64,000 nt of DNA from Leucoraja ocellata (lineage: Eukaryota), in NCBI GenBank assembly GCA_036785375.1, contig JAWMAR010000059.1:7192001-7256000 (forward strand), read 5' to 3'. How positions within the stretch are numbered: position 1 is the first letter of the stretch; the number at the start of each line of letters is the position of its first letter. The translations under genes were made by a program, and so were the position numbers. The notes beneath the pieces were generated by a model. The model did not search any database, was not told where the DNA came from, and worked only from the letters and a program-made list of their open reading frames with translations. Below, piece by piece: positions 1 through 51,927 of this stretch.

Positions 1-30
1 AATTAAATAGACTATTGACTATTGACTATT

Positions 31-8722: not shown

Positions 8723-8944
8723 GGACATTGTAAGGGGACCCTAACACCGTATGGTATACTTGCCTTCTTCGGTCGTGGAATTGAGTATAAGTGTAAGGAA
8801 GTCACAATGCAGATTTATAGGATTTTGAGCCGGTCGTATTTGGAATAGTGCGTATAGTTCTGGTCGATCCCATTACAGGAAGCATGTGAAGGCTTTGGAG
8901 AGGGTGCGGAAGAGGCATACCAGAATGATACCTGGATTAGAGGG

Positions 8945-9768: not shown

Positions 9769-9807
9769 GGTTTTTGTCAACCTCGGCCGCCTCGCCGCGT
9801 CGCTGTG
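9769..9807 (-). other. 23-bp-spacer recombination signal sequence of V1
   Basis: Minus strand: heptamer CACAGCG (9807-9801), 23-nt spacer, consensus nonamer ACAAAAACC (9777-9769). Confidence 0.95.
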
Positions 9808-10103
9808 TAGCTTCCATGCGCAGAAATACAGGGCTGAGTCATTCGCTACCAGGCTGGTGAATATCAGATCGAACCGGTTCTTTGTTCTGACCGCGGAGAG
9901 ACCGTTCGTCGTCTCTTTCGGTTCCACGTGCGTCTGACTTATGGAATAGAACAGGTCCCGGAGCCCCCCTCCGGCGGACTGTCCGTACCAGTACATATAG
10001 TCACTGTCGCTCCCTCCCTCCGCCGTGCAGCGTAGTTCCAATGCATTCCCGGGTTCTCTAGAAAAGGTGGTTGGATTCTGGCTGACGGTCACCGAGTTCA
10101 CAT
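9808..10103 (-). CDS. TRBV: TCR beta V gene segment V1, V exon (apparently functional; inverted relative to J-C)
   Basis: tttccag acceptor, then an open frame VNSVTVSQNP...LELRC...YMYWYGQ...DSALYFCAWKL with both Cys and the Trp of an Ig V-set domain, abutting a 23-RSS. Confidence 0.92.
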
Positions 10104-10797
10104 CTGGAAATAGAGAGACAAAGAGTGGGGAGAGTGAAAAAGAAGGGGGCAGGGTGTGAACGACGGACTTTCGACGGAGGGGCAATAAATGGGGAGCGAT
10201 GCGGTGTAGGAGACGTGGGGAGTTTGAGAGAAAGATGGGCAGTGCGAGGGAGAGGGGGAGACATTGAGTGATGTGAAGATGGAGAGGTAGAATCAGCGGG
10301 AGGAGAAGAGGAGGGGGTAGAGATGGGGAGATGTTGGAGACATCGGGGAATGTGAAGATGGATAGACAATTTAAAGAGATAAGAGTGGAGGACAGGTTAT
10401 AGAGAGGGCCAGAGGACAGAGAGATGCGGTGTGAGGGAGATAGATTGTAGCGAGAGTGGAGGCGAAGGAGTGCGTAGAGAGGAAGAGGGGGGTTTAGAGA
10501 GATGGGGTAAGGTGAGATATTGGTGAGACAGATAGAAAGTGTGGAGTAGAATTAGAGGATACGACAGAGATTCGGAGAAGTAGAGAGAAAACAGAGAGAG
10601 GTGAGATGAAGGGGTAAGTGTGAGAGAGACAGGAAAGATATTGCAAGAGAAGGAGAGGGAGAGATAAAGAATAAAGGGGGAGGAAAGAGAGATAGAGAAG
10701 AGAGAGAATGACAGCGGGAGAGAAACAGGGAAAGATAAATGCAGAGAGAAGGGAACGGCAGGGGGAGAAAGAAGGGCGTTCGGTGAATCCCACTTAC

Positions 10798-10834
10798 AAG
10801 GAAACCAGGTCCCCACAGCGAGGAGGATAAACAT
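10798..10834 (-). CDS. TRBV: Leader exon of V1 (MFILLAVGTWFP)
   Basis: ATG at 10834; 37-nt hydrophobic exon ending in a phase-1 GTAAGT donor, in frame with the V exon. Confidence 0.88.
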
Positions 10835-11744
10835 CTTTCTGAGGGCTCTCTCCACTCAATGACAGAAGTGTGGAGATCGAGCGCCGGTCGTCGGACTGGA
10901 GCGGAATCGCACGTGGCATAGAACCGCCCCTTCACCAAGGGTAACCAATCCGAATCATGTGGAAATGTATCAAACCATGAGAGTAATGCATCGGGTAGAC
11001 GCACAGAGACTCTTGCCCACAATAGTGAATCGAGGACCAGAGGGCAGGTTCAACGTGAAGTGGAAAAGGTTTAATAGGAATCTGAGGGGTAACTTTTTCG
11101 CACATGTGAGTAGTGCGTGTGTGGAACAAGCTGCCAGAGGATTTAGTTGAGGCAGGGACAATCCCACATTTAGACGGTTACATGGATAGGACAGGTTTCG
11201 TGGGATATGGACCAAACGCGGTGAAGTGAGGTTAGTGTAGCTGGGAAATGTTGGCCGTTGTGGGCAAGTTGGGCCGAAGTTGGCCATACTGTATCACTCT
11301 GTGACTTCATGCCTCAACGTAGATATGGACTCGGGACGACTCACGGTGGAGTTNNNNNNNNNNNNNNNNNNNNNNNNNNNNNNNNNNNNNNNNNNNNNNN
11401 NNNNNNNNNNNNNNNNNNNNNNNNNNNNNNNNNNNNNNNNNNNNNNNNNNNNNNNNNNNNNNNNNNNNNNNNNNNNNNNNNNNNNNNNNNNNNNNNNNNN
11501 NNNNNNNNNNNNNNNNNNNNNNNNNNNNNNNNNNNNNNNNNNNNNNNNNNNNNNNNNNNNNNNNNNNNNNNNNNNNNNNNNNNNNNNNNNNNNNNNNNNN
11601 NNNNNNNNNNNNNNNNNNNNNNNNNNNNNNNNNNNNNNNCCCTCTTTCTCTTTATTTCTTTCTCTCTCTCTTTCGTTTTCTCCCTCTTTCGTTTTCTCCC
11701 TCTCTTTCGTCCTCTTTCACCACATCTTCTTCCTTTCCCTGCTC

Positions 11745-14700: not shown

Positions 14701-14973
14701 ACAACATTCTTAAGAGGTTGGACAGGTTAGATGCAGGAATATTGTTCCCGATGTCGGTGAAGTCCAGAACAAGGGGACACAGTTTAAGGATAAGGTGGAC
14801 ATCTTTTTGGACTTAAATGAGAAACATAAATTCACACAGAGTGGTGAATCTCTGGAATTCTCTGCCACAGAAGGTAGTTGAGACTAGTTCATTGGCTATA
14901 TTTAAGAGGGAGTTAGATGTGGCCCTTGTGGCAAAAGGGTTCAGGAGGTATGAAGAGAATGCAGGTACAGGAT

Positions 14974-14976
<3 letters not shown>
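11745..14976. mobile_element. Patchwork of CR1 LINE fragments (both strands; longest about 13680-14976 on +)
   Basis: Endonuclease motif VIMGDFN (11751-12152), QHGFMKGKSCL and AFDKVPH (13737-14333), and repeated 3' UTR sequence. Confidence 0.85.
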
Positions 14977-15025
<49 letters not shown>

Positions 15026-16291: not shown

Positions 16292-18118
16292 GATATTGAG
16301 TTGGATAAATAGTAATGAACATATTGAATGGCGGTGCAGGCTCGATAGGCCGAATAGCCTACCCCTGCACATATTTTCTATATTTCTGTGTTTTTATGGA
16401 TAGGACAGGTTTCGAGGAATATGGACTAAACGCGGGGAAGTGAGGTTAACGTTGCAGGGACATGTTGGCCGATGTGGGCAAGTTGGACCGAAGTTGGCCA
16501 TACTGTATAATCTACGACTGCATGTCTCACAAAGATATGGACCCGGGACGACTCACGGTAGGATTTGTCTTTAAATAACTTTCTCGTAATCCCCCCTTTC
16601 TTTCTTTCTTCCTTTCTCTCTTTATATCTTTCTCTCTCGCTCTCTCTTTCGCTCTCTCTCTCTTTTTTTCTCTTTCCCTTTCGTCCTCTTTCACACCCTC
16701 TTCTTCCTTTCCCTCGCTTTTTAAGAATAACGAGGAAAGTGATTGGAATTTATTACCTTCCGTCACAATGAGGAACGTGAGGGATCCGCAGTGGTGGATG
16801 TTTATATTCACATGGAACCCTTGAAAGTTTGAGTGGCCCTTGGTTATGCTGGCAGGAAAAGTATCATTTAATTTAGTTTCGAGATCCAACTTCGGCCCAC
16901 CGAGTCTGCGGCGACCAGCGATCCCCGAACCACACACACCAGGAAGGATTTGTTATTTTATCAAACCAATTCGCCTATAAACCTGTTTTATTTCGTTTAC
17001 TTTAGTTGTGTTTACTTTACTTTCATGTAGATTAGATTAATTTATATTGTCACGTGCAACGAGGTACAGTGACACTGTTGTTGTTGTGTGCTATCCAGTC
17101 CGCAAAAGATTACAATCAATCCATCCAGAGTGGACCCATAATGGAGAAATTTATAATGTTTTGGTCAAGATAAAGTCCAGCAAAGTCCGATTAAAGATAG
17201 CGCGAAGGTCTTCAATCAGTAAAAGGGCAGGACCGCTCTCTGGTTGGAGATAGGACGGTTCATTTACCCGATAACATATGTGAAAACATTGTCCCACAGA
17301 TCCCTGTTCAATATTTCGCCTCTCATCTTAAACCTATGGCATCTGTTTTTTTGATTCTTAAATTCTCTACACTGGGTAAGTGTGTGAATTTACCCTATTT
17401 ATTCCCTTCGTGATTTTACGTACCCCTATACGACCACACCACATGCTCCTGCGCTCCAATCTTAGCCTGGTCAATCACTCCCTATAGCTCAGGCACTCGA
17501 GTCCTGGCAACATATTCGTAAATCTTCTCAGCACTTCTCCAGCTTAACAACAACTTTCGCATAACAGGGTCTCCAAAAGTGAGCAAAGTACTCCAAATGG
17601 ATCGTACTCCAAATTTAGTCTCACCAACTGCTCGTGTAACAGTAACGTGAACGTTAAGCCTTTACACCCAACACCCTGCCTGATGAAGGCAAATGTGTCG
17701 AAAGCCATCTTTGTGACGCTGTATACCTTTGACAAATATTTCAAAGAAATGTAGGGAGGTGAGAGGACATCATAAGTGGACCCCTAACAGCGTATGGTAT
17801 ACTGTTTTCGTCGGTCGTGGAATTGAGTATAAGAGTCAGGAAGTCACAATGCAGATTTATAAGATTTTGAGCCGGTCGCATTTGGAAAATTGCGTATAGT
17901 TCTGGTCGATCCCATTACAGGAAGGATGTGAAGGCTCTGGAGAGAGTGCGGAAGTGGCATTCCTCAATCATTCCGGCACCTGCAGTTCCTTTTATCTGGA
18001 GATGATTCTCATCGTCCCCGCTGGAGGTCGCACCGCACCCCGCACTTCTCAGACCGGGGAAGGGGACACCTGTTCTCCCATCGACAGTCACCTCCCCCCA
18101 TTTATAAAAGGCGAGGAG

Positions 18119-18152
18119 GGTTTTTCTAGGCCCGCCCCGCCGCGTCGCTGTG
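18119..18152 (-). other. Defective RSS of V2
   Basis: Heptamer CACAGCG, spacer only 18 nt, nonamer AGAAAAACC. Confidence 0.85.
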
Positions 18153-18448
18153 TATACTCCATGCGCAGAAATACCGGGCTGAGTGATTCGCCGCCAGGCC
18201 GGTGAACTTCAGATCGAACCGGTTGCCTTTTCTGACCGCGGAGAGACCGTTCGTCGTCTCCTTCGGATCCACGTGCATCTGATTAATGGAAAAGAACAAG
18301 TTACCGAGCCCCTAGCCGGCGGACTGTCCGTACCGGTACATACAGTCATTGTTGCCCCCTTCCTCCGCCGTGCACCGCAGCTCCAAAAAATCCCCGGGAT
18401 CTCCTGAAAACGTGGTTGGATTCTGGCGGACGGTCACCGAGTTCACAT
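18153..18448 (-). pseudogene. TRBV: TCR beta V pseudogene V2 (paralogue of V1)
   Basis: VNSVTVRQNP...LELRC...CMYRYGQSAG*GLGNLF...HSARYFCAWSI: in-frame TAG at 18314-18312, conserved Trp changed to Arg, broken RSS. Confidence 0.92.
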
Positions 18449-19163
18449 CTGGAAATAGAGAGGCCAAGAGCGAGGGGAGTGAAAAAGAAGGGGGGGGGGG
18501 GGGGGTGAGAACGACTGTCATTCGAGGGGGAGGGGGCAATAAATGGGGAGGGATGAGGCATTAGAGGTCGCGGGGAGTTTGAGAGAGTGATGGGGAGAAG
18601 GGGTAAGGGAGAGGGAGAGGGGGAGAAATTGAGTGATGTGAAGGTGGAGATATAGAATCAGAGGGAGGAGAAGAGGAGGGGTTCGAGACATGGGGAAATG
18701 TGGAGATGGAGAGATACACTTAAAGGGAGGAGTGTGGAGGGCAGGATATCGAGAGCGAGAGAAGTCAGAGAGATGTGGTATGAGGGAGATAGATTGAGCG
18801 AGAATGGAGAAGATGGAGTGTGGAGAGAGGAAGAGGGTGATTGAGAGATGGCGTAAGATGAGATATATTGGTGAGACAGAGAGAAAGTGTGAAGTAGAAT
18901 TAGATTTTACAGATTCGGACAAGTAGTGAGAAAACAGAGAGAGGTGAAGTTAAGGGGTAAGCTGGAGAGAGACAGGAGAGCGATTGTTAGAGGAGGAGAG
19001 GGAGAGATAATTAATAAAGGGGAAATAAAGAGAGGGGGGGGATAGAAAATGACAGAGGGAGAAAACGGGGATCGATAAATGCAGAGAGAATGCAGAGAGA
19101 AGGGGAGAGATGGGGGAGATGGAAGCGGGGAAGAAAGAAGGGCGTTCGGTGAATACAACTTAC

Positions 19164-19200
19164 AATGAAACCAGGTCCCCACAGCGAGAAGGAGATACAT
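19164..19200 (-). pseudogene. TRBV: Leader exon of V2 (MYLLLAVGTWFH)
   Basis: 37-nt exon with GTAAGT donor, homologous to the V1 leader. Confidence 0.85.
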
Positions 19201-19300
19201 ATTTCTGCGAGCTTTCTCCACTCAAAGACAGAAGTGAGGAGATCGAGCGCCGGACATGGGAGTGTAGGGGAATCGCACTGTGCATGGGGTGGGACAGGGG

Positions 19301-19310
19301 TGACGTGGCA
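19301..19310. promoter_or_regulatory. CRE-like motif in the V2 promoter
   Basis: TGACGTGG about 100 bp upstream of the ATG; V-beta promoters typically carry a CRE-like decamer. Confidence 0.45.
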
Positions 19311-20708
19311 TAGAAACGCCCATTCTCCTATGGTAACCAATCTGAATCATGTGGAAATATATAAAACCAGGAGAGGAATACATCGGATAGACGCTCAGAG
19401 TCTATTTGCCAGAATAGTGCATCGAGGACCAGAGGACAGGTTCAAAGTGAAGTGGAAAAGATTCAATAGGATTCTGAGGGGTAACCTTTTCGCACATTGG
19501 GCGGTGCGTGTGTGTAACAAGCTGCCACATGAGGTCGTTGACCCAGGGGCAATCCCCACATTTGAGAAACATTTAGACAGTTACATCGATAGGACAAGGT
19601 TCCAGCGATATTGACCAAACGCGGTGAAGTGAGGTTAGTGTAGCTGGGGACATGATGGCCGGTGTGGGCAAGTTGGGCCGAAGTTGGTCATACTGTATCT
19701 CTCTATTACTTCATGCCTCACATAGATATGGACTCGGGCCGACTCACGGTAGTAATTAACTTTCTCGTAATCCCCCCTTTCCTTCTTTCTTTGTTCCTTT
19801 CTTTCTTTCTACCTCTTTCTCTCTCACTATCTCTTTCGCGCTCTCTCTCTTTCGTCCTCTTTCACAACCTCCTCGTCCTTTACCTCGCACTTTAAGAATA
19901 AGGAGGAAATATATTGTACTTCATTGCCTTCCATCACAATGAGTAATGTGGGGGATCCGCTGTGGTGGATATTTATATTAACTTGTAAATAGTGTTGTGG
20001 CTCGTTGCATTTTTTTTAACATGGCTGTATGGTAATCATGGCTTTCACTGTACTTTAAATGGTAAATGTCACAATAAACTGACCGTGAAACCCGTGGAAC
20101 CTTTAAACCATTCTCTCACAATTTCTCTCCCTCTATTTGTTACTCTCCTCCTCTCTCCGTATNNNNNNNNNNNNNNNNNNNNNNNNNNNNNNNNNNNNNN
20201 NNNNNNNNNNNNNNNNNNNNNNNNNNNNNNNNNNNNNNNNNNNNNNNNNNNNNNNNNNNNNNNNNNNNNNNNNNNNNNNNNNNNNNNNNNNNNNNNNNNN
20301 NNNNNNNNNNNNNNNNNNNNNNNNNNNNNNNNNNNNNNNNNNNNNNNNNNNNNNNNNNNNNNNNNCCCCTCCCTTTCCTTCTATAAGCTCTCGCTCGCGA
20401 CATATCTCTGTCTCCTTTATCGAAACCATATCGAAGCAATGGCAAATGAAATAAAACAACGCCTCTACTTCCTTGGAAATATTATGAAGGTCGTCAAGCT
20501 TCAACAACCATCACCAACCTCTACAGTTGAACGCATTTTAGTGGGACTCAGTTAAAGCAAATCCACAATTTCGTCACTTCGGATTGGCTAGTTGGCGCTA
20601 CTGGGGCGTGTCCCAAGCAACATTGGAGTTTATTTGGCTAATCCTTTGCTAGCAAAATAAGTGCATCCTCTCCGCTGCCCTTAATCGCAGAATAGATTCC
20701 AACTAAAG

Positions 20709-20747
20709 ATGTTACTGCTGTTGTGCCTCCCTTCTTTGGTCCCCGAC
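20709..20747 (+). pseudogene. TRBV: Probable leader exon of V3 (MLLLLCLPSLVPD)
   Basis: Hydrophobic ATG-initiated exon followed by GTAAGT, but phase 0 instead of phase 1. Upstream are a half-CRE (cgtcac, about 20572) and an ATTGG box. Confidence 0.7.
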
Positions 20748-21730: not shown

Positions 21731-22038
21731 GTGTATCGTGTAATGATGATATCGTCCAGTTACCCACATCTCTCGGGGTCAGGAAGGCGAACCGGCCAAG
21801 ATGGATTGCTCTCAGGCGGGGAACATTCGTAACAACATGTTGTGGTATCTCCAGAAGCGCGGCGGCGGGTTGACGCTGATCGCCTCGGTTTACATCAACA
21901 GCGAGGCCCGCCTGGAGGAGAGTTTTAAGGGCAGATTCGTGGTTACGAGGACGATGGAGAACAAGAAATCAACTCTGGAGATCCACATGGTTAAGCGAGA
22001 GGACGGGGCGGTCTATTTCTGCGGGGCTACGGATGGGG
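21731..22038 (+). pseudogene. TRBV: TCR V gene segment V3 (different family, same orientation as J-C), frameshifted in FR1
   Basis: ttttccag acceptor; VSCNDDIVQLPTSL, then a 1-nt frameshift to GQEGEPAKMDCSQ...MLWYLQK...FKGRF...EDGAVYFCGATDG. Confidence 0.85.
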
Positions 22039-22077
22039 CACAGCGGTGTAGACTCAGGCGGCGTCCGTACACAAACT
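22039..22077 (+). other. 23-RSS of V3
   Basis: CACAGCG, 23-nt spacer, ACACAAACT. Confidence 0.92.
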
Positions 22078-24910: not shown

Positions 24911-24914
24911 TATC

Positions 24915-37900: not shown

Positions 37901-38251
37901 ATCCAAAATTGAAGCTGCGATCTCCCGAAGTTACAATTCTCCAGCCATCTACCCAGGAAATTAATAGCAAGGGCAAAGCCACGGTGGTTTGTCTCATCAC
38001 TGATTTCTACCCGGACAACATCAATATACATTGGTTTATTGATGACTTTAAACAATCCAAAGATGTTGCAAACATCCAGATGGATCCCAGCTCCCAGAGC
38101 GATGACGGGGGGATCACCTTCAGTATCAGTAGTCGCATTAGATTGGACGCCCGAGATTACGCAAAGGCCAAGCAAGTCGTGTGTGTAGTAGACCACTACA
38201 AGAATGGATCTATACCACAAACTAAACGTGTCACCTACAACATCAAACAAG
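37901..38251 (+). CDS. TRBC: TCR beta constant region exon 1 (Ig C1 domain)
   Basis: Polypyrimidine tract + cag acceptor; DPKLKLRSPEVTILQPSTQEINSKGKATVVCLITDFYPDNINIHW...TFSISSRIRLDARDYAK..VVCVVDHY...NIKQ, with G|GTGAGT donor. The KATxVCL...FYPD...SSR motifs are typical of C-beta. Confidence 0.96.
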
Positions 38252-38742: not shown

Positions 38743-38882
38743 AGCTTAAATTTCAAACAGTGCAAGCTGGGAAGCTGACTTCCCTCATTTGCAAAACTAT
38801 CCTATGTGGAATATTTATTTCAGTATTAGCTTGTAAAACCATTACATCCAACCCTCTCTCTCTGGTGGAATTAAGACCATGA
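38743..38882 (+). pseudogene. Degenerate duplicate of the C-beta transmembrane exon
   Basis: Reads ELKFQTVQAGKLTSLICKTILCGIFISVLACKT versus the functional EAKTQAMEAGKLTYMILICKSILYGIIASVLACKGK. Acceptor taacag changed to taacgg; no donor. Confidence 0.85.
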
Positions 38883-39249: not shown

Positions 39250-42200
39250 TAAATAGTTAAGACCAAAGTTGGACCCTTGAAAACTGAAACAGGTGAATTT
39301 ATTTTAAAGGACAAGGAAATAGCAGATGAATTGAACAGGTAGTTTGTATCCGTCTTCACGAAGACAGGCATAACCAATTTCCCTGATGTACTAGTGGCCA
39401 GAGGATCTAGGGTGGCACAGGAACTGATGGAAATTCACATTAGGCAGACAATGGTGTTGGCTAGACTAATGGGACTGAAGGCTGGTAAATCCCCAGTGCA
39501 TCCCAAGGTAGTTATTGAAGTGGATCTAGAAATCGTGGACACATTGTTGATCATTTCCCAATGTTCTATATATTCAGAATAAGTTCCTGTTGATTGGAGG
39601 GTAGCTAATGTTATCCCACTATTTAAGAAAGGTGGGAGAGAGAAAACAGTAAATTATAGAGCAGTTAGCCTAACATCTGTGGTGGGGAAGATGCTGGAAT
39701 CAAGCATAAAAGATGAAATGGCAGACGTTTAGATGGCGGTAACAGGATCGGTCTGAGTCAACATGGATTTATGATGTGGAAATCATCCTGACTATTCTTA
39801 TGGAATTTCTTGAAGATGTAACTACGAAAATGGACAATGGAGAGCCAGTGGATGTTGTGTATTAGGATGTCGTGTATGAACTCAAGGGGGCCAATATCCT
39901 GGCGGGGAGATTTGCAAAGGCTACTGGGGAGACTTTAAACTAGTATGGTTGGGGGGAGAGACACAAATTGGGAAAGCTAGCAGTCAGTGTGTGAGGCAGG
40001 GGGGCAGAGAATGGTAGCACTCTGACCCAAATGTAGGGGAGAGAGAAGAAAAATACAATAAACAGAGAATAAGAGAGGGTGGGTTTCTTAAATGTGTATA
40101 TTTTAATGAAATCATGGAAGATATTACAGCAGTGCTTTGGTAGGATAGATTGGAGGGAGGCTATTTGGGTGGAACTGAGAAATGGAAAAGGGGTAGCAAA
40201 AATTATAGGGGTGTATTATAGACCGCCAAATGGGGATAGAGAATTGGAAGAGCAAATATGTAAGGAGATTGTAGATATTAGTAGTAAGAACAAGGTAGTG
40301 ATTGTGAGAGATTTCAATTTTCCACACATAGACTGGGAAACACATTCTGCAAATGGGCTGGATGGGTTGGAGTTTGTAAAATGTGTGCAGGATAGTTTTT
40401 GCAGCAATACATATAAGTATCTACTAGTGAAGGGGCGGTGTTGGACCTCCTGTTAGGAAATGAGACGGGTCAAGTGGCAGAGGTATGCGTTGGGGAACAG
40501 TTCTGGTCCAATGATCAAAATACCATTAGTTTCAATATAATTATGCAGAGGGACAGAACTGCACCTAGGGTTGAGATTTTTGATTAGAGAAGGGCTAACT
40601 TTGAGGAGATGAGAAAGGATTTAAAAAGAGTAAATTGGGACAGTTTGTTTTATGGGAAAGATGTGGAAGAGAAATTGAGTACATTTAAAGGTGACATTTT
40701 AAGAGTACAGAATCTTTATGTCCCTGTTCGGTTGAAAGGAAATCGTAAAAATTGTAAAGAGCCATGGTTTTCAAGGGAAATTGGACCCTTGGTTCGGAAA
40801 AAGAGGGAGATCTACAATAATTATAGGCAGAATGGAGTAAATGAGGTGCTTGAGGAGTATAAAGAATGTAAAGAGAATCTCAAGAAAGAAATTAGAAAAG
40901 CTAAAAGAAGATATGAGTTTGCTTTGGCTTGTAAGGTAAAAGTAAATCCGAAGGGTTTCTACCGCTATATTAATAGCAAAAGGATACGAGGGATAAAATT
41001 CGTCCATTAGTGAGTCATAGTGGTCAACTATCTGCAGAGCGAAAAGAGATGGGGGAGATATTGAACAGTTCCGTTTCTTCGGTATTCACCAAGGAGAAGG
41101 TTATTGAATTATGTGCGGTAAGGGAAACAAGTAGAGTAGCTATGGAAACTATGAGATTCAAAGAAGAGGAAGCACTGACACTTTTGCGAAATATAAAAGT
41201 GGATACGTCTCCAGGTCCGGACAGGATATTCCCTAGGACATTGAGGGAAGTTAGTGTAGAAATAGCAGGGGCTATGGTAGAAATATTTCAAGTGGCATTA
41301 GAAACGGAATAGTGCCGGGGGATTGGCGTACTGCGCATTTTGTTCCATTGTTTAAAAGGGGGTCTAAGAGTAAACCTAGCAATTATAGACATGTTAGTTT
41401 GACGTCAGTGGTGGGCAAATTAATGGAAAGAATACTTAGAGATAATATATATAAGCATCTGGATAAACAGGGTCTGATTAGGAACAGCCAACATGGATTT
41501 GTGCCTGGAAGGTCATGTTTAACTAATCTTCTTAAATGTTTTGAAGATGTTACTCGGGAAATTGACGAGGGTAAAGCAGTGGATGTTGCGTATATGGACT
41601 TCAGTAAGGCCTTTGACAAGATTCCTCATGGAAGGTTGGTTAAGAAGGTTCAATGGCTGGGTATTAATGGTGGAGTAGCAAGATGGATTTAACAGTGGCT
41701 GAATTGGAGATGCCAGAGAGTAATGGTGGATGGTTGTTTGTCAGGTTGGAGGCCAGTGACGAGTGGGGTGCCACAGGGATCTGTGTTGGGTCCACTGTTG
41801 TTTGTTATGTACATCAATGATCTGGATGATGATGTGGTAAATTGGATTAGTAAGTATGCAGATGGTACTAAGATAGGTGGGGTTGTGGGTAATGAAGTAG
41901 AGTTTCAAAGTCTACAGAGAGATGTATGCCAGTTGGAAGAGTGGGCTGAACGATGGCAGATGGAGTTTAATACTGATAAGTGTGAGGTGCTACATCTTGG
42001 CAGAACAAATCAAAATAGGACGTACATGGTAAATGGTAGGGAATTGAAGAATGTAGATGAACAGAGGGATCTGGGAATAACTGTGCACAGTTCCCTGAAA
42101 GTGGAATCTCATGATAGATAGGGTGGTAAAGAAAGCCTTTGGTGTGCTGGCCTTTATAAATCAGAGAATTGAGTATAGAAGTTGGGATGTAATGTTAAAA

Positions 42201-43760
42201 TTGTACAAGGCATTGGTGAGGCCAATTCTGGCGTATGGTGTACAATTTTGGTCGCCTAATTATAGGAAGGATGTCAACAAAATAGAGAGAGTACAGAGGA
42301 GATTTACTAGATGATGCCTGGGTTTCAGCAACTAAGTTACAGAGAAAGGTTGAACAAGTTAGGGCTTTATTCTTTGGAGCGCAGAAGGTTAAGGGGGGAC
42401 TTGATAGAGGTTTTAAAATGATGCGAGGGATAGACAGAGTTGACGTGGAAAAGCTTTTCCCCCTGAGAGTAGGAACGATTCAAAGAAGGGCGCATGACTT
42501 GAGAATTAACGGACTGAAGTTTAGGGGTAACATTAGGGGGAACTTTTTTACTCAGAGAGTGCTGGCTGCGTGGAATGAGCTTCCAGTGAAGGTGGTGGAG
42601 GCAGGTTCGTTTTTATCGTTTAAAAATAAATTGGATAGTTATATGGACGGGGAGAGAATGGAATGTTATGGTCTGAGCGCAGGTATATGGGACTAGGGGA
42701 GAATATGTGTTCGGCACGGACTAGAAGGGTCGAGATGGCCTGTTTCCGTGCTGTAATTGTTATATGGTTTTATGGTTATATGGTTATATGGTGTACGTGG
42801 ACATTCAGAAAGCATTTGATAAGGTCCCACATAGAAGATTAGTGGGCAAAATTAGAGGAAACGTTATTTGAGGTAGGATAGGGATAGGGATAGGAAATTG
42901 GTTGTCAGACAGCAGACAAAGTGCAGGGATTAACGGGTCCCTTTCAGAATGGCAGGCAGTGACAGGTGGGGTACTGCAAGGCTCGTTGCTGGGAGTGTAG
43001 CTATTTACAACATACTTCAATAATTTAGATGAAGGGATTCAAAGTAACATTAGCAAATTTGCAGATGACTCAAAGCTGGGTGGCAGTGTGAATGGGTGCA
43101 TGGCAGATGCAGCTTAATGTGGATACATGTGAGGTGATGCGCTTTGGAGACAAAAAAACAGAAAGGCTGATTATTATCTGAATGGTGTGAAGTTGGGAAA
43201 AAAGAAATATACAAAGATATCTGGGGGTCCCTGTTCACCAATCACTGAAGGTAAGGATACAGGTACAGCAGGCAGTGAAGAAAGCCAATGACATTTTGGC
43301 CTTCATAACAAGAGGAGTTGAGTATAGGAGCAAAGAGGTCCTTCTGCATTTGCACAAGGTCCTAGTGAGACCACACCTGTAGTATTGTGTGCAGTTTGGG
43401 TCTGGTAGTTTGAGCAAGGACATTCTTGCTATGAGAGAGAGCAGTGTAGGTTCAGAAGGATGGTGGAACTGTCATATGGCGAAATAATGGAGCGACTGTG
43501 CTTCTATTCAGCGGCATTTAATAGGATGGAGGGGGGTCTAATAGAAACATATAAAATTATTAATGGATTCGACGATAGATATAGGAAACCAGCTGCTGGG
43601 GGAGTCCAGAACCAGGTGCCACAGTTTATGAATAAGGGGTAGTAGGCCAGTTCGAACTTAGAAGTGGAAAACGTTTTTTTCACACAGAGAGTTGTGAATG
43701 TGTGGAAATCTCGACCTCAGAACGCAGTGGATTCACTGAACTAAAAAGAGAGTTAGATAG
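39250..43760 (+). mobile_element. Older CR1 fragment split by a nested younger CR1 insertion
   Basis: The DVVYLDFQKAFDKVPH-encoding sequence breaks at about 39862 and resumes at about 42791. Confidence 0.8.
39880..42790 (+). mobile_element. Younger CR1 LINE, most of ORF2 with (TATGGTTA)n tail
   Basis: Successive ORF fragments cover the endonuclease (GVYYRPPN, DFNFPHIDW) and RT (QHGF, AFDKIPH, GVPQGSVLGP, YAD); same subfamily as the 2298-5390 and 6446-8722 copies. Confidence 0.92.
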
Positions 43761-43769
43761 AGCTTCATC

Positions 43770-46139: not shown

Positions 46140-46352
46140 CAACCAACAGTCGCAAGTTCGATCCTACTCTAGGGACAATTGTTTAGGATCCAATTAACCG
46201 ACACACCCGCACATCTTTGGAATGTGGGAGGAAACGGCAGCACCGGCGTCACAGGTAGAACTTGCAAACTACGTACAGACAGCACACATTGGCAAATCGA
46301 AGCCGGGCCTCTGACGCTGCAACGCAGCAGGTCTACCGCTGCACCACTGTGC
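46140..46352 (-). mobile_element. V-SINE (HE1-like) copy
   Basis: Reverse complement has ggcacagtggtgcagcggtagacctgctg...ggcttcga and tgtacgtagtttgcaagttct. Confidence 0.65.
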
Positions 46353-46481
46353 CTCCTGTGCAGGCTGGTGGGAGTCTGGTATTGTGATGGATCGGGCTAA
46401 ATCCATAAATCTGTATTTTCTATGCATTAAATATGTAAATAATCTACTACTGACCAACGTGTTTCATATTTCTTCTTACAG

Positions 46482-46502
46482 AGACGTGTGGCATAAATAA
46501 AG
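46482..46502 (+). CDS. TRBC: C-beta exon 2 (21-nt connecting peptide ETCGINK with the interchain Cys)
   Basis: ttcttcttacag acceptor and G|GTGAGT donor; phase 1-1, in frame between exons 1 and 3. Confidence 0.9.
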
Positions 46503-49500
46503 GTGAGTGGCTTTACTTAAATACGGATTCCGTTATTATTTCAAGACTGTTTACACTTTGTGTGTCAGTGTTTAAACATGAATATCACAGAGTCATACAG
46601 AGTGCAAAAGGCACTTCGGCCTAACTTGCCCACACCAACCAACATGCCCCATGTATACTACGCCCCCCACCCCCCCCCCCCCCCCCCCACCCCCACAACC
46701 CCCACCCCCCCCCCCCTCCCCACGCTTGGCCCATATCCTTCGAAACAATTCCTATCCAAGCACCTGTCTAACTGTTTCTTAAACGTTCTGATAGTACCTG
46801 CCTCAACTACCTCCCCTGGCAGATCTTTCCAGATATCCACGTAGGAATATATCCGTGTGGAAAGTTGCCCCCCAGATACCTATTAAATCTGGCACACCTC
46901 ACATTAAACCGATGTCCTCTGGTTCTCGATCCCCTGTGCTTTTACCCGATCTATTACTCTCGCGATTGTGTACATATCTATTAAGATTACCCTTCATCCT
47001 CCTGCACGCCAAGGAATAAAATCAGGCTTTAAGTCCTGCTAACATCCTTGTAAATCTTTGCTGCATACTTTCCGGCTTAACAACATCTTTACCATAATAT
47101 GCTGACAAAACTGGACTCAATACTCAAAATGTGGCCTTCCCTATCTATGTATTGTATATCTGCTATATAAACTATGTCCTTGGTTCCTGATCACCCGATC
47201 TATTCCCCTCATGTGTAAGAACGAAATGCAGATGCTAGTTTAAACCAAAGATAGACAAAAAAATCTGGAGTATTTCAGCGGGTCAGGCAGCATCTCCGGA
47301 GAAAATGAATTGGTGACGTTTCTCAACACGAAACATCACCCATTCCTTCCCTCCAGAGATGATGCTTGTCCCGCTGAGTTACTCCACGTGTTTGTGTCTA
47401 TCTTATATTCCCCCCACGAATTTATATACCTCTACGCGATCATCCTCTTCCTCCTGCGCTCCTCGTAAATCTTCTCTGCAACAGCTCTAGTTGATTATAT
47501 AGAGACCAAAGCTGAACACAATACTGCAAAGGTGGCCTCACCAACATCTTATACAAATAACCATATAACCATATAACAATTACAGCACGGACACAGGCCA
47601 CCTCGGCCCTTCTAGACCGTGCCGAACACGTATTCTTTCCTAGTCCCATCTACCTGCACTCAGACCATAACCCTCCATTCCTTTCCCGTCCATATAACTA
47701 TCCAATTTATTTTTAAATGATAAAATTGAACCTGCCTCCACCACCTTCACTGGAAGCGCATTCCACACAGCTACCACTCTCTGAGTAAAGAAGTTCCCCC
47801 TCATGTTACCACTAAACTTCTGTCCCTTAATTCTCAAGTCATGTCCTCTTGTTTGAATTTTCCCTACGCTCAGTGGGACAAGCTTATCCACGTCAACTCT
47901 GTCTATCCCTCTCATCATTTTAAACACCTCTATCAAACACCACCTTAACCTTCTGCTCTCCAAAGAATAAATACCTAACTTGTTCATAAAGACCTAACGT
48001 GTTCATAAAGAATGTAACATGCCCTCTCAACTTCCATATTCAATACTTTGACGGTAGTCCAATATGCCAAAAGCGTTCTTGACACCCCTATTTACATGTG
48101 ATTCTACTTTCAAGGAACAACATATAACAGGATGACCAAAACTGAACATGATACTGTAAATCTGTCCTCATCAATGTCTTGTACAACTGTAACATAATCT
48201 CCCAATGTATATTATAATTTCTAATTTGGTCTTCGATGACAAATAAACGGTATTGTATTATTACTGTATTGCATCATCAGTCAGGGTATTGAGTATATCT
48301 CTGTTTTCTTAACAGAGCTAAAATTCTGACAAGGAAGCTGCGAATCTGATTTAGTAGTAGGTTTAGTATAATTGACTTTTAGTTAATGTACAAGTCCACC
48401 GCCGATTTTCCGATGCCCTGTCTGGATTATCCGTTTTGCCAGACCAGCCGAGATCACGGACTCCGAGAGGAGGACAACGGTACTGGCACAGTCCGCCTAG
48501 GCCGCTAGGAGCCGGATACGGGCCCCGCAAAGTCAGTCTCACAATTCTGCTATGGCAATTGTCCTGCTGTTTCCGGCCATGCCAAAGATCCAGAAGTTGC
48601 CGCAGGAGGCAAATTCAACCGGCCTATCAGCCATTAATGTCTCACTGAGATCGAGATGAGCTACCTTACCAGGCGTAGATGCCACATTTTGAGGGGGACT
48701 TCCGGGGACATATTTCAAGTGTCCTCTCGTACATTGTCTGGATTAAAAGACGTGCCGGACAACTAGTTGCTGTAAAATTGGGAGTAGGAACGGTTCCGTC
48801 CAAGCGCGCAGGAAATTGCAGATAATTGCGGATGGTACACAGACCACCACATAAACCAACTTCCTTACATTGATTGAATTTATACCTCACACCGGCTCAG
48901 CAAGGCCACCAGCATAATCGAGGACGAATTGAACCCTGGCCACTCCCTCTTTCCCACTCCCATCAGGCAAAAGGTAGAGACGTGTGAAAACGCACACCTC
49001 CAGTGTCGGGGTCAGTTTCTTCCGCGCAGTTATTAGGCAACTGAACCATCCTACTACAAATCCTGAAATACATCTACCTCACTGGAGAACCTTTCCTGGA
49101 CTTTATCTTGAACGAAAGTATATTCACATTATTCCCATTATCATGTATCTGTACACTATGGATAGCTTGGTTGCAATCTTGTATTGCCTTCCTGCTGACC
49201 GGTTAGCACGCACAAAAGTGTTTTACTGTACCTCGGTACACGTGGCAATAAGCTAAACTAAACTTAAAGAAAATTGGTGGTGGAACTGTATATGCCGCTT
49301 TCAGGGAGTTCGGACACGGTCACCAAGATCCCTCCGTACATCAATGCTGTTAAGTGTTGACAGTCAATGGAGTATTTCCCCTTACATTCGACCTCCCAAA
49401 GTTTAACACCTTACACTTGCACGGATTAAATTCCATTACCTATTCTCCGCTCGTTTCTGTAGCTGATCTATATCCCGCTGTATACATTGGCAGCTTTCTT

Positions 49501-49646
49501 CCCAGTCCGCAACGCCAGCGATTGTTAATTCATTATCATCTGTTGAGTTAAAGTGCCTATCCTACATTAGCAAGTAAGTATGTTATTGTTTAAACTTAAT
49601 TCCTAACTAAAGATGTTCATACCAAATTGTTATGTTCCCTTAACAG

Positions 49647-49753
49647 AGGCCAAAACACAGGCAATGGAAGCTGGAAAACTGACTTATATGATCCTGATTT
49701 GCAAGAGCATTCTCTATGGAATAATTGCTTCTGTGCTGGCTTGCAAAGGCAAG
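49647..49753 (+). CDS. TRBC: C-beta exon 3 (transmembrane, 107 nt)
   Basis: EAKTQAMEAGKLTYMILICKSILYGIIASVLACKGK has the conserved TM Tyr...Lys-Ser..Tyr pattern; taacag acceptor and AAG|GTAAGT donor. Confidence 0.95.
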
Positions 49754-51229
49754 GTAAGTAATTCTGGGGGAAAACATATTTTGTTATATATTTTTGAGTA
49801 TAGAAGTTGGGAAGCAATGTTAAATTTCTATAATTTGTTGGGGAAGCCATAGTTAGAGTATTGCGTTCAGTTTTCATCACTATGTTATAGGAAAGATGAT
49901 GTGAAGCTTGAAAGAGAAGATTTAGTAGGATGTTGCCAGGACTCGATCGACTGATCTATAGGGAGAAGTTGTGCAGGCTAGGACTGTATTCCTTGAAACG
50001 CAGGAGGATGAGGGGTGAACTAATAAAGGGGTACAGCATCTTGAGCGGAATGGACCAGGCAGACGCACAGAGTCATTTGCCCAGAGTAGGGGAATCAAGA
50101 ACCAGAGAGCATAGGGTTGAGGTGAGAAGGAAATGGATTTAATGGGAACGTACGAGGTAACGTTTTGATACAACGGGTGGTGGGTGCATGGAATGCGCTG
50201 CCAGAGGAGGTAGTGCAGGCATGTACTATCACAATGTTTAATAAATATTTAGACAAGATTACTGAAGTTTAGAGGGATGTGGACCAAACGCCGCCAAACG
50301 GCCTGTGTCCACGCTGACTTTGACTCTATATCCACATGCCTGTCACAGAGGTATGGGGTCTATTGTTCATTGAGGTGGGAATCATAGAGTTGTAGAGGCG
50401 GACAACACGGAAACTGATCTTTCAACTCAACATGCCCATGATGCCAAAGATGCCACATCTACACTAGTCTCACCAGACTGTATTTGGGCCATAACCATCT
50501 AAGCATATCTTATCCATGTACCTGTCGAAATAACATTGTGACAGTGCCTGCCTCAACTATCTCCTCTGGCAGCTCATTCCATATACCCACCATACAATGC
50601 TTGAATGTGCCTCAGGTTCTCAGTAACCCCCCCCACCTCCTACCTTAAACTATGCCCTTTGGTTCTCAATTCCCCAAACGTGCGCTCGCCATGTCTGCGC
50701 ATTCACCCTATCTATTCCCGTCATGATTTTATCCACCTCTATAAGATCACGTCTCATCGTCCTGCAGGCCAATGAATAAAGTCCTAGCCTGCCTAACCTC
50801 TCCCTGTGCTTGTGAGTCTTGGCAACATCGTGGTAAATCCTTGCTGCACTCTTTCCGATGTTAAACAAAGGGACACAAATTGCTGGAGTAATTTAGCAGT
50901 TTAGGCAGCATCTCTGGATTACATGGATAGGTGAGAAGTGTCTCGGCCCGAAACGTCACGTATCCATAATCTCCAGGAACAGATACATGGGCAGGGATGT
51001 TTTAGAGGGATATTTAGTTTTAATGAAGTTTATTATTGCACGTGTACCGAGGTACTATGACATTTTTTCGTTGCGTGCTATACAGACAGCGGAAGGACTA
51101 TACATGACTACAATTCAGCCATCCACAGGGTAAAGATAAAGGATTAAGGGAATAAGTTTAGTGCAAAGGTATAACATTGAAGTCCAATAAATTCACATTA
51201 AACATTGTTCGAACATCTCCAATTAGCTA

Positions 51230-51640
51230 GATGGGCGTCAGGGCCGCTCTCTCGTTGCTGAGAGGACGCTTCAGTTGCCTCATTACAGCTGGGAAGAAAC
51301 TCTCCCCGAAATTGGAGGTATGCGTTTTCAAAATTCTGTACCTCATGCCAGATGGGAGAGAGGGGAATTGGCAGCCACCGCGGTGAGACTACTCTCTGAT
51401 TATGCTGGTGGCCTTGCCGTGAAGTGTAATCGGTGTCCATGGAAGAGAGGTTGGTTAGCGTGCTGGTCTTTGCTGCGTCCACACCTCTGCGATTTCTTGT
51501 GGACTTGGATGGAGCTGTGCCCAAACCATGTTGTGATGCATCCCGCTAGAATGATTTCTACGGCACATCCATAGACGTTGGTGAGGGTTGTTGGGGACAT
51601 GCCAAATATTCTAAGCATTCAGAGGAAGTAGAGTCGTTGA
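51230..51640 (-). mobile_element. LINE 3' fragment (Rex1/Babar-like); related pieces at about 34070-34230, 48890-49260, 55760-56270 and 59810-60390
   Basis: LR.FGMSPTTLTN.Y.C.VE.IL.GCIT.WFG motif. Confidence 0.65.
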
Positions 51641-51900
51641 TGTGCATACCTGACATGTGATCGAAACAAGGGCAGGTGGGACTACATTATCCGCGGCAAC
51701 TTGCTTGGCATGAGCAAGTTGGGCCAAATCGCATGTTTCCGTACTGTATTGTCTCTGCCCTTCTATGCTGCTTTTTCTCTGCTTCTCTTTCTGTCTTCCC
51801 CTCATTTTCTCCACTTCCCTTGCTTTCTTCCTTCCCGTTCTCTTCGAGTCGGGACCCGGCTGCATAATCTAATACTGATATGGCATATTTCTTATTTCAG

Positions 51901-51927
51901 ACATCTTCCAACAAGAGGTTTGATTGA
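51901..51927 (+). CDS. TRBC: C-beta exon 4 (cytoplasmic tail TSSNKRFD*)
   Basis: cttatttcag acceptor, phase 0, short basic tail, TGA at 51925-51927. Confidence 0.9.
   Translation, partial: TSSNKRFD

What the first reader, a model, noticed from the sequence alone, without database searches (positions are those of the whole stretch)
9769..51927. Compact chondrichthyan TCR-beta unit: inverted CAW-type Vs, one forward V, a single J and one C, possibly a tandem multi-cassette TRB organisation
Seen: two minus-strand Vs ending YFCAWK/YFCAWS, one plus-strand V, only one FGxG J, and a full C-beta. Known: in mammals an inverted V ending in CAWS (human TRBV30, mouse Trbv31) lies 3' of C-beta and the enhancer, an inverted 3' V also exists in chicken, and TRB loci normally have several J per C. 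Inference: either these Vs rearrange by inversion onto the D-J to the right, or they are the 3' inverted Vs of another D-J-C unit off the left edge. The second case would mean TRB here is built from tandem V-D-J-C-enhancer-V(inverted) cassettes, reminiscent of shark Ig clusters.
Basis: partly seen in the sequence, partly recalled or inferred. Interest (0 to 1): 0.85.

Follow-up and report, generated by a model that had tools for sequence, protein, structure and literature searches.

The report
Skate TCR-beta: two opposed constant genes

Summary
The listed elements are real. V1 (minus strand, YFCAWK) is intact with a canonical 23-RSS. V2 (minus, YFCAWS) is dead: an in-frame stop, Trp41 changed to Arg, and an 18-nt RSS spacer. 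V3 (plus) has a 23-RSS but a frameshift in FR1. There is one J in readable sequence and a complete four-exon C-beta on the plus strand.

It has good splice sites. It matches 33 of 35 residues of an expressed skate TCR-beta cDNA, which itself carries a CAW-type V.

As assembled, the region is therefore a head-to-head pair: C'(-) <- V1, V2psi | V3psi -> J -> C(+). V1 and V2 are ordinary upstream Vs of C'. They are not 3' inverted Vs, and the units are not tandem cassettes. This layout is known from salmonids and pike.

Caveats:
- C' exon 1 and any D or J for C' are not in readable sequence.
- The only strand switch lies across the unverified gap 20163-20365. A scaffolding inversion would give a conventional tandem two-cluster locus and cannot be excluded.
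- "Single J" is unsafe. The Leucoraja erinacea RefSeq model splices a different J onto an identical C exon 1.
- No D was found.

The scan has not noted this on other DNA.

The parts
1766..1872 (-). Transmembrane exon (exon 3) of a second C-beta gene, C'. It encodes AKIQTMQTAKLTYLILICKSILYGIIISVLACKAK and has intact AG acceptor and GT donor sites.
   Evidence: tblastn of P0003; sequence. It matches 33 of 35 residues of the TM of skate cDNA P0152, against 27 of 35 for the plus-strand TM exon.
1259..2234 (-). Inverted paralogous block holding the C' TM exon and its intron flanks. It is the counterpart of 49295-50255.
   Evidence: Self-blastn gives 73.4% over 998 columns. Exon 90 of 107 nt identical; flanks 73.8% and 72.8%.
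9769..9807 (-). V1 23-RSS: CACAGCG, 23-nt spacer, ACAAAAACC.
   Evidence: RSS scan, heptamer 6 of 7, nonamer 9 of 9; sequence.
9808..10103 (-). V1 V exon. Open frame with Cys23, Trp41 and YFCAWK. CAW-type TRBV family.
   Evidence: V-set, E 5e-11; V tree.
10798..10834 (-). V1 leader exon MFILLAVGTWFP. Its phase-1 donor matches the V-exon acceptor.
   Evidence: Sequence read.
18153..18448 (-). V2 V exon, a pseudogene: in-frame TAG, Trp41 changed to Arg, ends YFCAWS. Its RSS at about 18119-18152 (computed by hand) has an 18-nt spacer.
   Evidence: It is a tandem duplicate of the V1 unit (9608-11347 vs 17957-19750, 80%).
16396..16817 (-). Remnant of the upstream region of a third V unit. No V exon follows; a LINE lies there instead.
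   Evidence: 79% identity to 19585-19988.
20709..20747 (+). Candidate V3 leader exon MLLLLCLPSLVPD. Its phase-0 donor does not fit the V exon.
   Evidence: Sequence read.
21731..22038 (+). V3 V exon with a frameshift in FR1 near 21780. The rest is open and ends YFCGATDG. It belongs to the TRTMENKKSTL TRBV family.
   Evidence: 5 of 5 shark Vs split over two frames; clade support 98/99.
22039..22077 (+). V3 23-RSS: CACAGCG, 23-nt spacer, ACACAAACT.
33880..33907 (+). J 12-RSS: nonamer AGTTTCAAC (4 of 9), 12-nt spacer, heptamer CACTGTG.
33908..33960 (+). J segment SSNYDYTFGKGTKLVIV with a phase-1 GT donor.
37901..38251 (+). C-beta exon 1 (C1-set Ig domain).
   Evidence: Pfam C1-set, E 1e-16. 100% identical to P0003 residues 232-347. 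Contig word depth is like that of the flanking unique DNA.
38761..38850 (+). Degenerate extra TM-like exon inside intron 1. It has a 2-residue deletion and no GT donor.
   Evidence: tblastn gives 61.5% over 39 residues; sequence.
46482..46502 (+). C-beta exon 2, the hinge (E)TCGINK with the interchain Cys.
   Evidence: matches P0003.
49647..49753 (+). C-beta exon 3 (connecting peptide and TM, with the conserved Lys).
   Evidence: 35 of 35 residues match P0003.
51901..51927 (+). C-beta exon 4: TSSNKRFD followed by the stop codon.

Best explanation
The window is the constant-region end of a skate T-cell receptor beta locus, and it holds two constant genes in opposite orientation.

The plus-strand unit runs V3 (frameshifted), then J, then a complete four-exon C-beta. 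Of the minus-strand unit only the transmembrane exon of a second, about 27% divergent C-beta (C') is visible, at the left edge. The CAW-type Vs V1 (intact) and V2 (dead) lie upstream of C' on the same strand. As assembled this is a head-to-head pair of V-(D)-J-C units with the Vs in the middle.

Inferred mechanism: V1's 23-RSS pairs with the 12-RSS of a D that belongs to the minus-strand unit, and V1 joins by ordinary deletion. The transcript then splices J' to C'. This would give chains like the skate cDNA P0152, which has a CAW V with the C'-type constant. Inversional joining of V1 to the plus-strand D-J is allowed by RSS geometry but is a secondary possibility.

Shown: the elements, their strands, the lesions in V2 and V3, and the two C isotypes.
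Inferred: that C' is a complete working gene whose exon 1, D and J lie in the 5788-5987 gap or are unassembled; and which C V1 actually uses.
For: - TM' exon on the minus strand at 1872-1766 with intact splice sites.
- It sits in a 976-bp inverted paralogous block at 73% identity; the exon is 84% identical against 73-74% for its flanks.
- TM' matches 33 of 35 residues of cDNA-like protein P0152, whose C region is 73% identical to the plus-strand C and whose V ends YFCAWS.
- V1 and V2 cluster with P0152's V and a bamboo-shark CAWI V, support 98/94.
- The two skate C types are sister lineages, support 99/96, which points to a duplication within skates.
- V1 has an open frame, a leader and a perfect nonamer.
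- The V1 and V2 units are collinear across gaps 9278-9516 and 11354-11639.
- Both flanks of gap 20163-20365 are CT-rich on the plus strand.
- The RefSeq model P0003 links a V3-type V, a J and this C on one strand.
- A head-to-head TRB layout with Vs in the middle is documented in salmonids and pike (PMC10464911, passages read).
Against: - No C' exon 1, hinge, J or D is present in the readable 1873-9768. tblastn, sensitive blastn, motif and RSS scans were all negative. C' could therefore be a fragment.
- A degenerate third TM copy at 38761-38850 shows that stray TM exons do occur here.
- Between TM' and the plus-strand TM exon, 8 codons differ non-synonymously and 4 synonymously. That comparison gives no clear sign of constraint.
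- The only strand switch (V2 minus, V3 plus) lies across gap 20163-20365, which nothing bridges.
- Only one intact V lies between the two C genes. The bulk of the V repertoire must be elsewhere, which fits the salmonid pattern poorly.
- No second C-type gene model of a skate turned up in two protein searches.
- RNA run X24 gave almost no cover of C exon 1 and no J-to-C joints, so there is no expression evidence.
Confidence: 0.5

Rival explanations
1. Scaffolding inversion. The block left of gap 20163-20365, reaching beyond the window's left edge, is flipped in the assembly. In reality all elements share one strand: V2psi - V1 - (D'-J')-C' - V3psi - (D)-J - C. That would be a conventional translocon with two tandem D-J-C clusters, as in mammals, zebrafish and axolotl.
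For: - The single strand switch coincides with an unbridged gap.
- The window has 10 N runs in 64 kb.
- Tandem D-J-C units are the common vertebrate pattern (PMC12529555, passages; PMC10464911, introduction passage).
- This order would put the large V array naturally upstream.
Against: - Both flanks of gap 20163-20365 are CT-rich on the same strand, as expected for one broken low-complexity tract.
- The gap has a non-round estimated length of 203. I take that, by inference only, as a sign of read-pair or long-read linking, which carries orientation.
- The flipped block would have to extend beyond the window to carry C' exon 4.
Confidence: 0.25
2. The minus-strand TM exon is a dead duplication fragment, like the relic in intron 1. 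V1 is used only by inversional V(D)J joining onto the D-J of the plus-strand unit. The plus-strand C would then be the only working C-beta here.
For: - No C' exon 1, J or D is visible.
- V1 is the only intact V within 24 kb of the J, because V3 is frameshifted.
- With V1 on the minus strand and J on the plus strand, the RSSs lie in direct orientation, which permits inversion. This is reasoned.
- Inversional use of reverse TRBV is well documented in mammals (PMC11264764, abstract and passages).
Against: - TM' keeps perfect splice sites and an open frame.
- It matches 33 of 35 residues of an expressed C isotype, which matches the plus-strand TM exon at only 28 of 35. The isotype that TM' represents is therefore in use in at least one skate.
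- That cDNA carries a CAW-type V.
Confidence: 0.15
3. The locus is built of tandem V-D-J-C-enhancer-V(inverted) cassettes, and V1 and V2 are the 3' inverted Vs of a plus-strand D-J-C unit lying off the left edge.
For: - More than one C-beta exists.
- Many elasmobranch species have two or more divergent C-beta gene models.
Against: - The C-beta exon at the left edge is on the minus strand, not the plus strand.
- No inverted V lies in the 12 kb downstream of the plus-strand C.
- C exon 1 has one-copy-like contig depth and no variant letters from a 90-99% paralogue in run X1.
Confidence: 0.05

Closest known systems
[quoted passage not shown]
   Same: Two C genes point outward. The Vs lie between them, each oriented toward its own C. 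Remnant inverted Vs without a visible D-J-C, as in the trout TRB4 case, resemble the V1/V2 situation here.
   Different: - In salmonids the paired loci on one chromosome are near-identical and hold tens of Vs. Here the two C types are about 27% divergent, only three Vs lie between them (one intact), and the V families on the two sides differ.
- The D, J and exon 1 of the minus-strand unit are not seen.
Mammalian and other amniote TRB with a reverse TRBV30/Trbv31-type V 3' of the last TRBC (PMC11264764, PMC11754216; passages read)
   Same: A V whose CDR3 stem reads CAW lies close to the D-J-C region on the strand opposite to a C-beta. Inversional joining would be geometrically possible.
   Different: - V1 lies 5' of J-C(+), not 3' of a C.
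- It shares its strand with a second C-beta, so it need not be an inverted V at all.
- Membership in the TRBV30 clade was not tested with a tree that includes tetrapod sequences.
Tandem TRBD-TRBJ-TRBC units: two in human and mouse, three in sheep, five in axolotl (PMC12529555; passages read)
   Same: More than one C-beta gene, each presumably with its own J and D, within one locus.
   Different: - As assembled, the two skate C genes are in opposite orientation.
- There are Vs between them.
Mouse TRG V-J-C cassettes (one of them inverted) and shark Ig V-D-J-C clusters. Both are recalled from memory; no call examined them.
   Same: Small self-contained V-(D)-J-C units, and a link between V family and C isotype.
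   Different: Nothing here shows that rearrangement is confined within a unit. The number of units in the genome is unknown.

Membership tests
TCR beta locus (TRB) | V segments followed by a 23-bp-spacer RSS | tested here: met
   V1: CACAGCG / 23 nt / ACAAAAACC. V3: CACAGCG / 23 nt / ACACAAACT. V2 has an 18-nt spacer and is defective.
TCR beta locus (TRB) | J segment with FGxG, a 12-bp-spacer RSS and a splice donor to C | tested here: met
   J at 33908-33960, heptamer CACTGTG, 12-nt spacer, weak nonamer (4 of 9), GT donor in phase 1, which matches the C exon 1 acceptor.
TCR beta locus (TRB) | D segment flanked by a 12-RSS on the 5' side and a 23-RSS on the 3' side | tested here: not met
   The best candidate anywhere scores 22 of 32 and lies downstream of C; none is credible. 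About 1.06 kb of N lies between V3 and J, so a D may simply be unread.
TCR beta locus (TRB) | Constant gene homologous to named TCR-beta chains, with C1-set domain, hinge Cys, TM Lys and a four-exon structure | tested here: met
   - Over the constant region, the Leucoraja erinacea RefSeq model P0003 is 45-47% identical to four named nurse-shark TCR-beta chains. P0003's residues from these four exons all match the window.
- P0003 is 73% identical to skate cDNA-like P0152.
- C1-set domain.
- Exons and splice sites.
3' inverted TRBV (TRBV30/Trbv31 type) | Located 3' of the last TRBC | tested here: not met
   V1 and V2 lie 24 and 16 kb upstream of the J of C(+). No V lies in 51928-64000.
3' inverted TRBV (TRBV30/Trbv31 type) | Transcriptional orientation opposite to every D-J-C unit of the locus | tested here: not met
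   V1 and V2 share the minus strand with the C' TM exon at 1872-1766.
3' inverted TRBV (TRBV30/Trbv31 type) | Membership of the TRBV30 sequence clade | tested here: inconclusive
   - V1 groups with elasmobranch CAW Vs, support 98/94.
- Its best PDB TCR hits are 5xov_J and Mel5 beta. V3 does not hit these.
- No tetrapod TRBV30 sequence was available for a tree. That Mel5 uses TRBV30 is recalled.
3' inverted TRBV (TRBV30/Trbv31 type) | Rearranges by inversion | not testable with these tools
   This needs repertoire or signal-joint data. The one RNA run laid had almost no TRB cover.
Head-to-head TRB pair (salmonid/pike type) | Two TRBC genes in opposite orientation pointing outward, with Vs between them oriented toward their own C | tested here: met
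   As assembled: TM'(-) at 1.8 kb, V1(-) and V2(-) at 10 and 18 kb, V3(+) at 22 kb, C(+) at 38-52 kb. This depends on the unverified join at 20163-20365.
Head-to-head TRB pair (salmonid/pike type) | Each unit is complete, with its own D, J and all C exons | tested here: inconclusive
   The plus-strand unit has a J and a full C but no D seen. The minus-strand unit shows only its TM exon in readable sequence.
Cluster-type organisation (shark Ig-like) | Many independent compact V-D-J-C units, with rearrangement confined within a unit | not testable with these tools
   Only leads exist.

The most novel reading that the evidence does not exclude
Elasmobranch TRB may be built from small, old V-(D)-J-C mini-clusters, each tying a V family to its own C isotype, rather than from one translocon.

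Leads:
- In this window the CAW-family V1 points at C', and the TRTMENKKSTL-family V3 points at C(+).
- The skate cDNA P0152 pairs a CAW V with the C' type.
- A bamboo-shark model, P0165, pairs a CAW V with a C that stands alone in the C tree.
- A V3-family V sits directly upstream of J-C in germline read-through models of little skate, zebra shark and sevengill shark. A whale-shark model also pairs a V3-family V with the zebra-shark-type C.

If this holds, the amniote arrangement of a reverse CAW-type V next to D-J-C could be the remnant of such an opposed mini-cluster that has lost its own C.
Probability: 0.15. Interest if true: 0.8.

Novelty: new member of a known kind. Interest (0 to 1): 0.5.

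Why it matters
I found no description of the germline layout of TCR-beta in cartilaginous fishes in seven full-text searches. [quoted passage not shown]

If the head-to-head reading holds, three things follow:
- A skate has two divergent, opposed C-beta genes about 36 kb apart with only three Vs between them. That would be an independent instance of the architecture so far described in salmonids and pike.
- The CAW-type V family was already sitting next to the D-J-C region, on the strand opposite to one C-beta, before bony and cartilaginous fishes parted. This bears on the origin of the conserved reverse TRBV30-type V.
- A testable question opens up: do V family and C isotype go together in elasmobranch T cells?

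If the scaffolding-inversion reading is right, the locus is ordinary: two tandem D-J-C clusters.

Tried and rejected
- **C exon 1 against the 90%-clustered protein set.** No hit. The length window of 64-203 aa excludes full chains. The all-against-all search then found P0003 and shark TCR-beta chains.
- **PDB sequence search with C exon 1.** Mostly Ig constant domains, with one TCR beta chain (6lir_B). I considered that the C might be an Ig light chain. I rejected this because of the hinge, TM and cytoplasmic exons and the 45-73% identity of P0003's constant region, which these exons match, to TCR-beta chains.
- **D segment.** Two RSS-pair scans and a search for the conserved D core with up to 2 mismatches found nothing credible. 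The 14 core matches lack flanking RSSs. I read the two next to gap 30240.
- **More J segments.** A relaxed [FWL]GxG scan and an RSS-plus-donor scan gave 4 candidates, of which 1 is J-like.
- **More V segments.** An HMM built from 10 TRBV regions was run against 1980 six-frame pieces. It found only V1 and V2. My own filter for more than 30% X dropped the V3 piece, so that search says nothing about V3.
- **C' exon 1, hinge and J' in 1-9800.** Sensitive blastn with the plus-strand exons and their flanks found only TE matches.
- **Copy number of C exon 1.** The exon 1 contig has word depth 37.3 in X1, against 21.8-40 for seven other unique pieces, and 29.7 in X2, against 13.3-28.7. There are no alternative letters in exon 1 in X1. 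This looks like one copy at 90% identity or more, but the tool warns that such depth is no copy number.
- **RNA.** Run X24 gave depth of 0.9 or less over exon 1 and no J-to-C joint. It is uninformative.
- **Other windows of this genome.** Five look-ups found no other TCR-beta window.
- **Papers.** Seven searches found no paper on chondrichthyan TRB germline organisation. PMC7909615 (Ott et al. 2021) and PMC3222143 (Criscitiello et al. 2010) are not held. Rast et al. 1997 was not available. These may already describe multiple C-beta genes or the locus.
- **Supplements.** I asked for none. The supplementary accession tables of PMC11754216 could show whether shark CAW-type Vs fall in its "inverted" clade.
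- **C tree rows dropped.** P0034 and P0042 (3' parts mis-modelled), P0051 and P0053 (near-identical to other Heterodontus rows), and P0161 and P0162 (my anchor motif did not find them).
- **Joined protein.** I searched the spliced C model exon by exon. I did not build or search a joined protein from the window's exons; that step was left out.

Full report
**What the window is**

The window is 64 kb with 10 N runs, and about 44% G+C over its read letters. Much of it is LINE and SINE debris.

C exon 1 translates to a C1-set domain. It is 100% identical over 116 residues to XP_055517541.1, "uncharacterized protein LOC129712847" of the little skate Leucoraja erinacea (P0003). DNA contigs of run X1 (coded organism A) match the window with 0-2 differences per piece of about 400 bp. 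Those of X2 (organism B) show 0-9. The genome is therefore a skate, identical or very close to L. erinacea. I could not decode the species.

**The observation**

- V1 (minus strand) has a leader at 10834-10798 and a V exon at 10103-9808 with Cys23, Trp41 and YFCAWK. Its 23-RSS has a perfect nonamer.
- V2 (minus, 18448-18153) is a tandem duplicate of the V1 unit at 80% identity. It carries an in-frame TAG, TGG changed to CGG at Trp41, and an RSS that is net 5 nt shorter, with an 18-nt spacer. It is a pseudogene.
- V3 (plus, up to 22038) has a good 23-RSS, but its FR1 is split over two frames. All 5 shark V proteins tested align their first FR1 residues in one frame and everything from about 21783 onward in another. 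The candidate leader's phase fits neither frame. The RefSeq model of L. erinacea starts at the internal Met just after the break. This suggests, by inference, that the defect is real and shared, not an assembly slip.
- One J (33908-33960) has a CACTGTG heptamer, a 12-nt spacer, a weak nonamer and a phase-1 donor that matches the C exon 1 acceptor.
- The plus-strand C-beta has four exons: 37901-38251, 46482-46502, 49647-49753 and 51901-51927, all with canonical splice sites. LINE insertions stretch it to 14 kb.
- No D was found on either strand.

I searched the C model exon by exon and did not build a joined protein from the window.

**Gaps**

Seven N runs lie inside the finding. None abuts a coding exon, so reading frame is not the issue. 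Order and orientation are.

- Across 11354-11639 the flanks are collinear with the paralogous V2 unit (11182-11347 matches 19585-19750, and 11643-11740 matches 19788-19885). That join is supported.
- Across 9278-9516, just outside the finding, the same holds.
- Across 20163-20365 nothing bridges. Both flanks are CT-rich on the plus strand, which is what one broken low-complexity tract would give, but the support is weak.
- No listed contig of 3 DNA runs spans 34449-34619.
- I filled no gap.

A tblastn of P0003 against the window found a second C-beta transmembrane exon on the minus strand at the left edge, 1872-1766. It has a polypyrimidine-AG acceptor, a GTAAGT donor and an open frame.

It sits in a 976-bp block (1259-2234) that is an inverted paralogue of 49295-50255 at 73% identity. 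The exon is 90 of 107 nt identical, and the intron flanks are 73-74% identical.

A protein search with the C part of P0003 found P0152, an unnamed old UniParc entry of 282 residues that reads like a rearranged skate TCR-beta cDNA. By recall it may be the clearnose skate clone of Rast et al. 1997; I could not verify that. Its C region is 73% identical to the plus-strand C. Its TM segment matches the minus-strand exon at 33 of 35 residues, against 28 of 35 for the plus-strand exon. The minus-strand exon therefore represents a second C-beta isotype (C') that is expressed in at least one skate.

In a C-region tree of 20 rows the two skate types are sisters, support 99/96. The duplication is therefore younger than the split between skates and sawfish.

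**Consequence for the "inverted" Vs**

V1 and V2 are on the same strand as C' and upstream of it. As assembled the layout is C'(-) <- V1 <- V2psi | V3psi -> J -> C(+). This is a head-to-head pair of units with the Vs in the middle.

This architecture is described for salmonids and northern pike (PMC10464911; abstract and passages). It includes cases where only inverted Vs remain of one unit.

P0152 carries a V ending YFCAWS. In a tree of 25 V regions, V1 and V2 group with it and with a bamboo-shark V ending YYCAWI, support 98/94. V3 groups with a different family found upstream of J-C in little skate, zebra shark, whale shark and sevengill shark models, support 98/99.

The simplest mechanism for V1 is deletional joining to a D-J of the minus-strand unit and splicing to C'. 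Inversion onto the plus-strand D-J remains possible but is not needed.

**Evidence against this reading**

- Nothing else of C' is in readable sequence. There is no exon 1, hinge, J or D between 1873 and 9768. That interval is mostly two LINE copies (2296-4432 with more 5' LINE sequence to about 5700, and 6450-8725) plus two gaps.
- If C' is complete, roughly 15-20 kb must be missing at 5788-5987. That estimate is inferred from the spacing in the plus-strand unit.
- A third, degenerate TM-like exon sits in intron 1 of the plus-strand C (38761-38850; 61.5% identity over 39 residues, a 2-residue deletion, no donor). Stray TM copies therefore do occur here.
- Between the two good TM exons, 8 codons differ non-synonymously and 4 synonymously.
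- No second skate C-type gene model appeared in two searches. This may only reflect how Ig and TCR segments are annotated.
- The only strand switch coincides with an unbridged gap. If the left block is flipped, the order becomes V2psi-V1-(D'J')C'-V3psi-(D)J-C. That would be a conventional translocon with two tandem D-J-C clusters, as in many vertebrates.
- With one intact V between the two C genes, most Vs must lie elsewhere. That fits the tandem reading at least as well.

**"One J, one C"**

The contig holding C exon 1 has a word depth like the flanking unique pieces: 37.3 in X1 (others 21.8-40) and 29.7 in X2 (others 13.3-28.7). No variant letters appear in exon 1 in X1. So there is no sign of further copies at 90% identity or more. 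The tool warns that such depth is no copy number.

P0003, however, splices a different J (…EAYFGSGTKLVVL) onto an identical exon 1. That J is not in the readable window. P0003's V part differs from V3 at 3 residues between the start Met and the point where the model leaves the germline sequence (read from the alignment). That is in line with the 0-2% difference between the window and run X2. P0003 is therefore probably the orthologue of this same V3-J-C unit in another individual or sister species. It could instead be a paralogue further upstream.

Either way, at least one more J serves this C. I did not try to place it in a gap.

**Wider context from public gene models**

By these models, two or more divergent C-beta sequences exist in Pristis, Pristiophorus, Mustelus, Scyliorhinus torazame, Rhincodon and Chiloscyllium (two species). 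Near-identical C-beta models also lie on three Heterodontus contigs. Multiple C-beta genes therefore look normal for elasmobranchs.

[quoted passage not shown] Seven searches found no paper on the germline TRB layout of a cartilaginous fish. Three likely sources are not held or were not available.

**Comparison with TRBV30**

The amniote reverse Vs lie 3' of the last C and form their own clade (PMC11754216, passages; PMC11264764). V1 fails the positional criterion, and it is not inverted with respect to C'. Its sequence affinity is suggestive only. Among PDB chains its best TCR hits are 5xov_J and the Mel5 beta chain, and neither appears among V3's top 60. That Mel5 uses TRBV30 is my recall.

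**Verdict**

This is a real TCR-beta constant-region neighbourhood of a skate. There is a second unit, but it is opposed, not tandem, and the Vs are its forward Vs.

The best reading is a head-to-head pair (confidence 0.5). The main rival is a scaffolding inversion hiding an ordinary tandem two-cluster locus (0.25). The finding is a new member of a known kind of layout, and I score its interest as moderate.

Noticed in passing
window 38761-38850 (+): A third, degenerate C-beta TM-like exon lies inside intron 1 of the plus-strand C. It is 61.5% identical to the real TM over 39 residues, has a 2-residue deletion and lacks a GT donor. With the copies at 1872-1766 and 49647-49753, the window holds three TM-exon copies, which points to repeated partial duplication of the C gene.
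   Followed up: partly
window 58400-58800 (+): About 6.5 kb downstream of C exon 4 lies a non-repetitive stretch with several motifs read by eye: two ACCACA (RUNX-like) sites, CAGGTG and CACCTG E-boxes, TGACTCA (AP-1-like), GGCGTCAC (CRE-like) and GATAG. Another note of this scan calls it a putative E-beta enhancer. I ran no conservation or enrichment test.
   Followed up: no
window 27006-29865 and 26232-26429 (+): Between V3 and J lies about 2.9 kb of 48- and 51-bp satellite (up to about 30 copies). Just before it are 5 copies of a 38-bp G+C-rich repeat inside a 52% G+C island. Their function is unknown.
   Followed up: no
window 2296-4432 (-), 6450-8725 (-), 39884-42781 (+): Three copies of one LINE family, 84-91% identical to each other, with long RT and endonuclease ORFs. 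They are inserted in the C' intron region, downstream of V1, and in intron 1 of the plus-strand C. They account for much of the spread of the C exons.
   Followed up: partly
window 16396-16817 (-): A third copy of the region upstream of the V leader (79% identical to 19585-19988) with no V exon behind it; a LINE follows instead. It is probably the stump of a third CAW-type V unit.
   Followed up: partly
P0003 (XP_055517541.1, Leucoraja erinacea), residues 1-231: The RefSeq model is chimeric. It strings together a germline V3-type V read through its RSS, about 110 residues that weakly match repeated (apparently TE-derived) sequences in the window, a J and the C exons. It starts at an internal Met of FR1. 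Similar read-through models exist for zebra shark (P0061) and sevengill shark (P0040, P0154), always with a V of the same family.
   Followed up: partly
proteins P0165, P0152, P0061, P0166, P0046, P0159: In the few sequences at hand, V family and C isotype go together.
- CAW-type Vs occur with the skate C' type and with a lone bamboo-shark C type.
- V3-family Vs occur with the Stegostoma/Rhincodon_b C type.
- Other V families occur with the nurse shark/Rhincodon_a C type.
The numbers are too small to test.
   Followed up: no
window gap flanks 11640, 20162/20366, 31427/31860, 30584, 58038/58220: Most assembly gaps sit in strand-biased CT- or GA-rich low-complexity tracts, which also fill the long leader introns of V1 and V2. 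These tracts, rather than large missing segments, may be why the assembly breaks there.
   Followed up: partly
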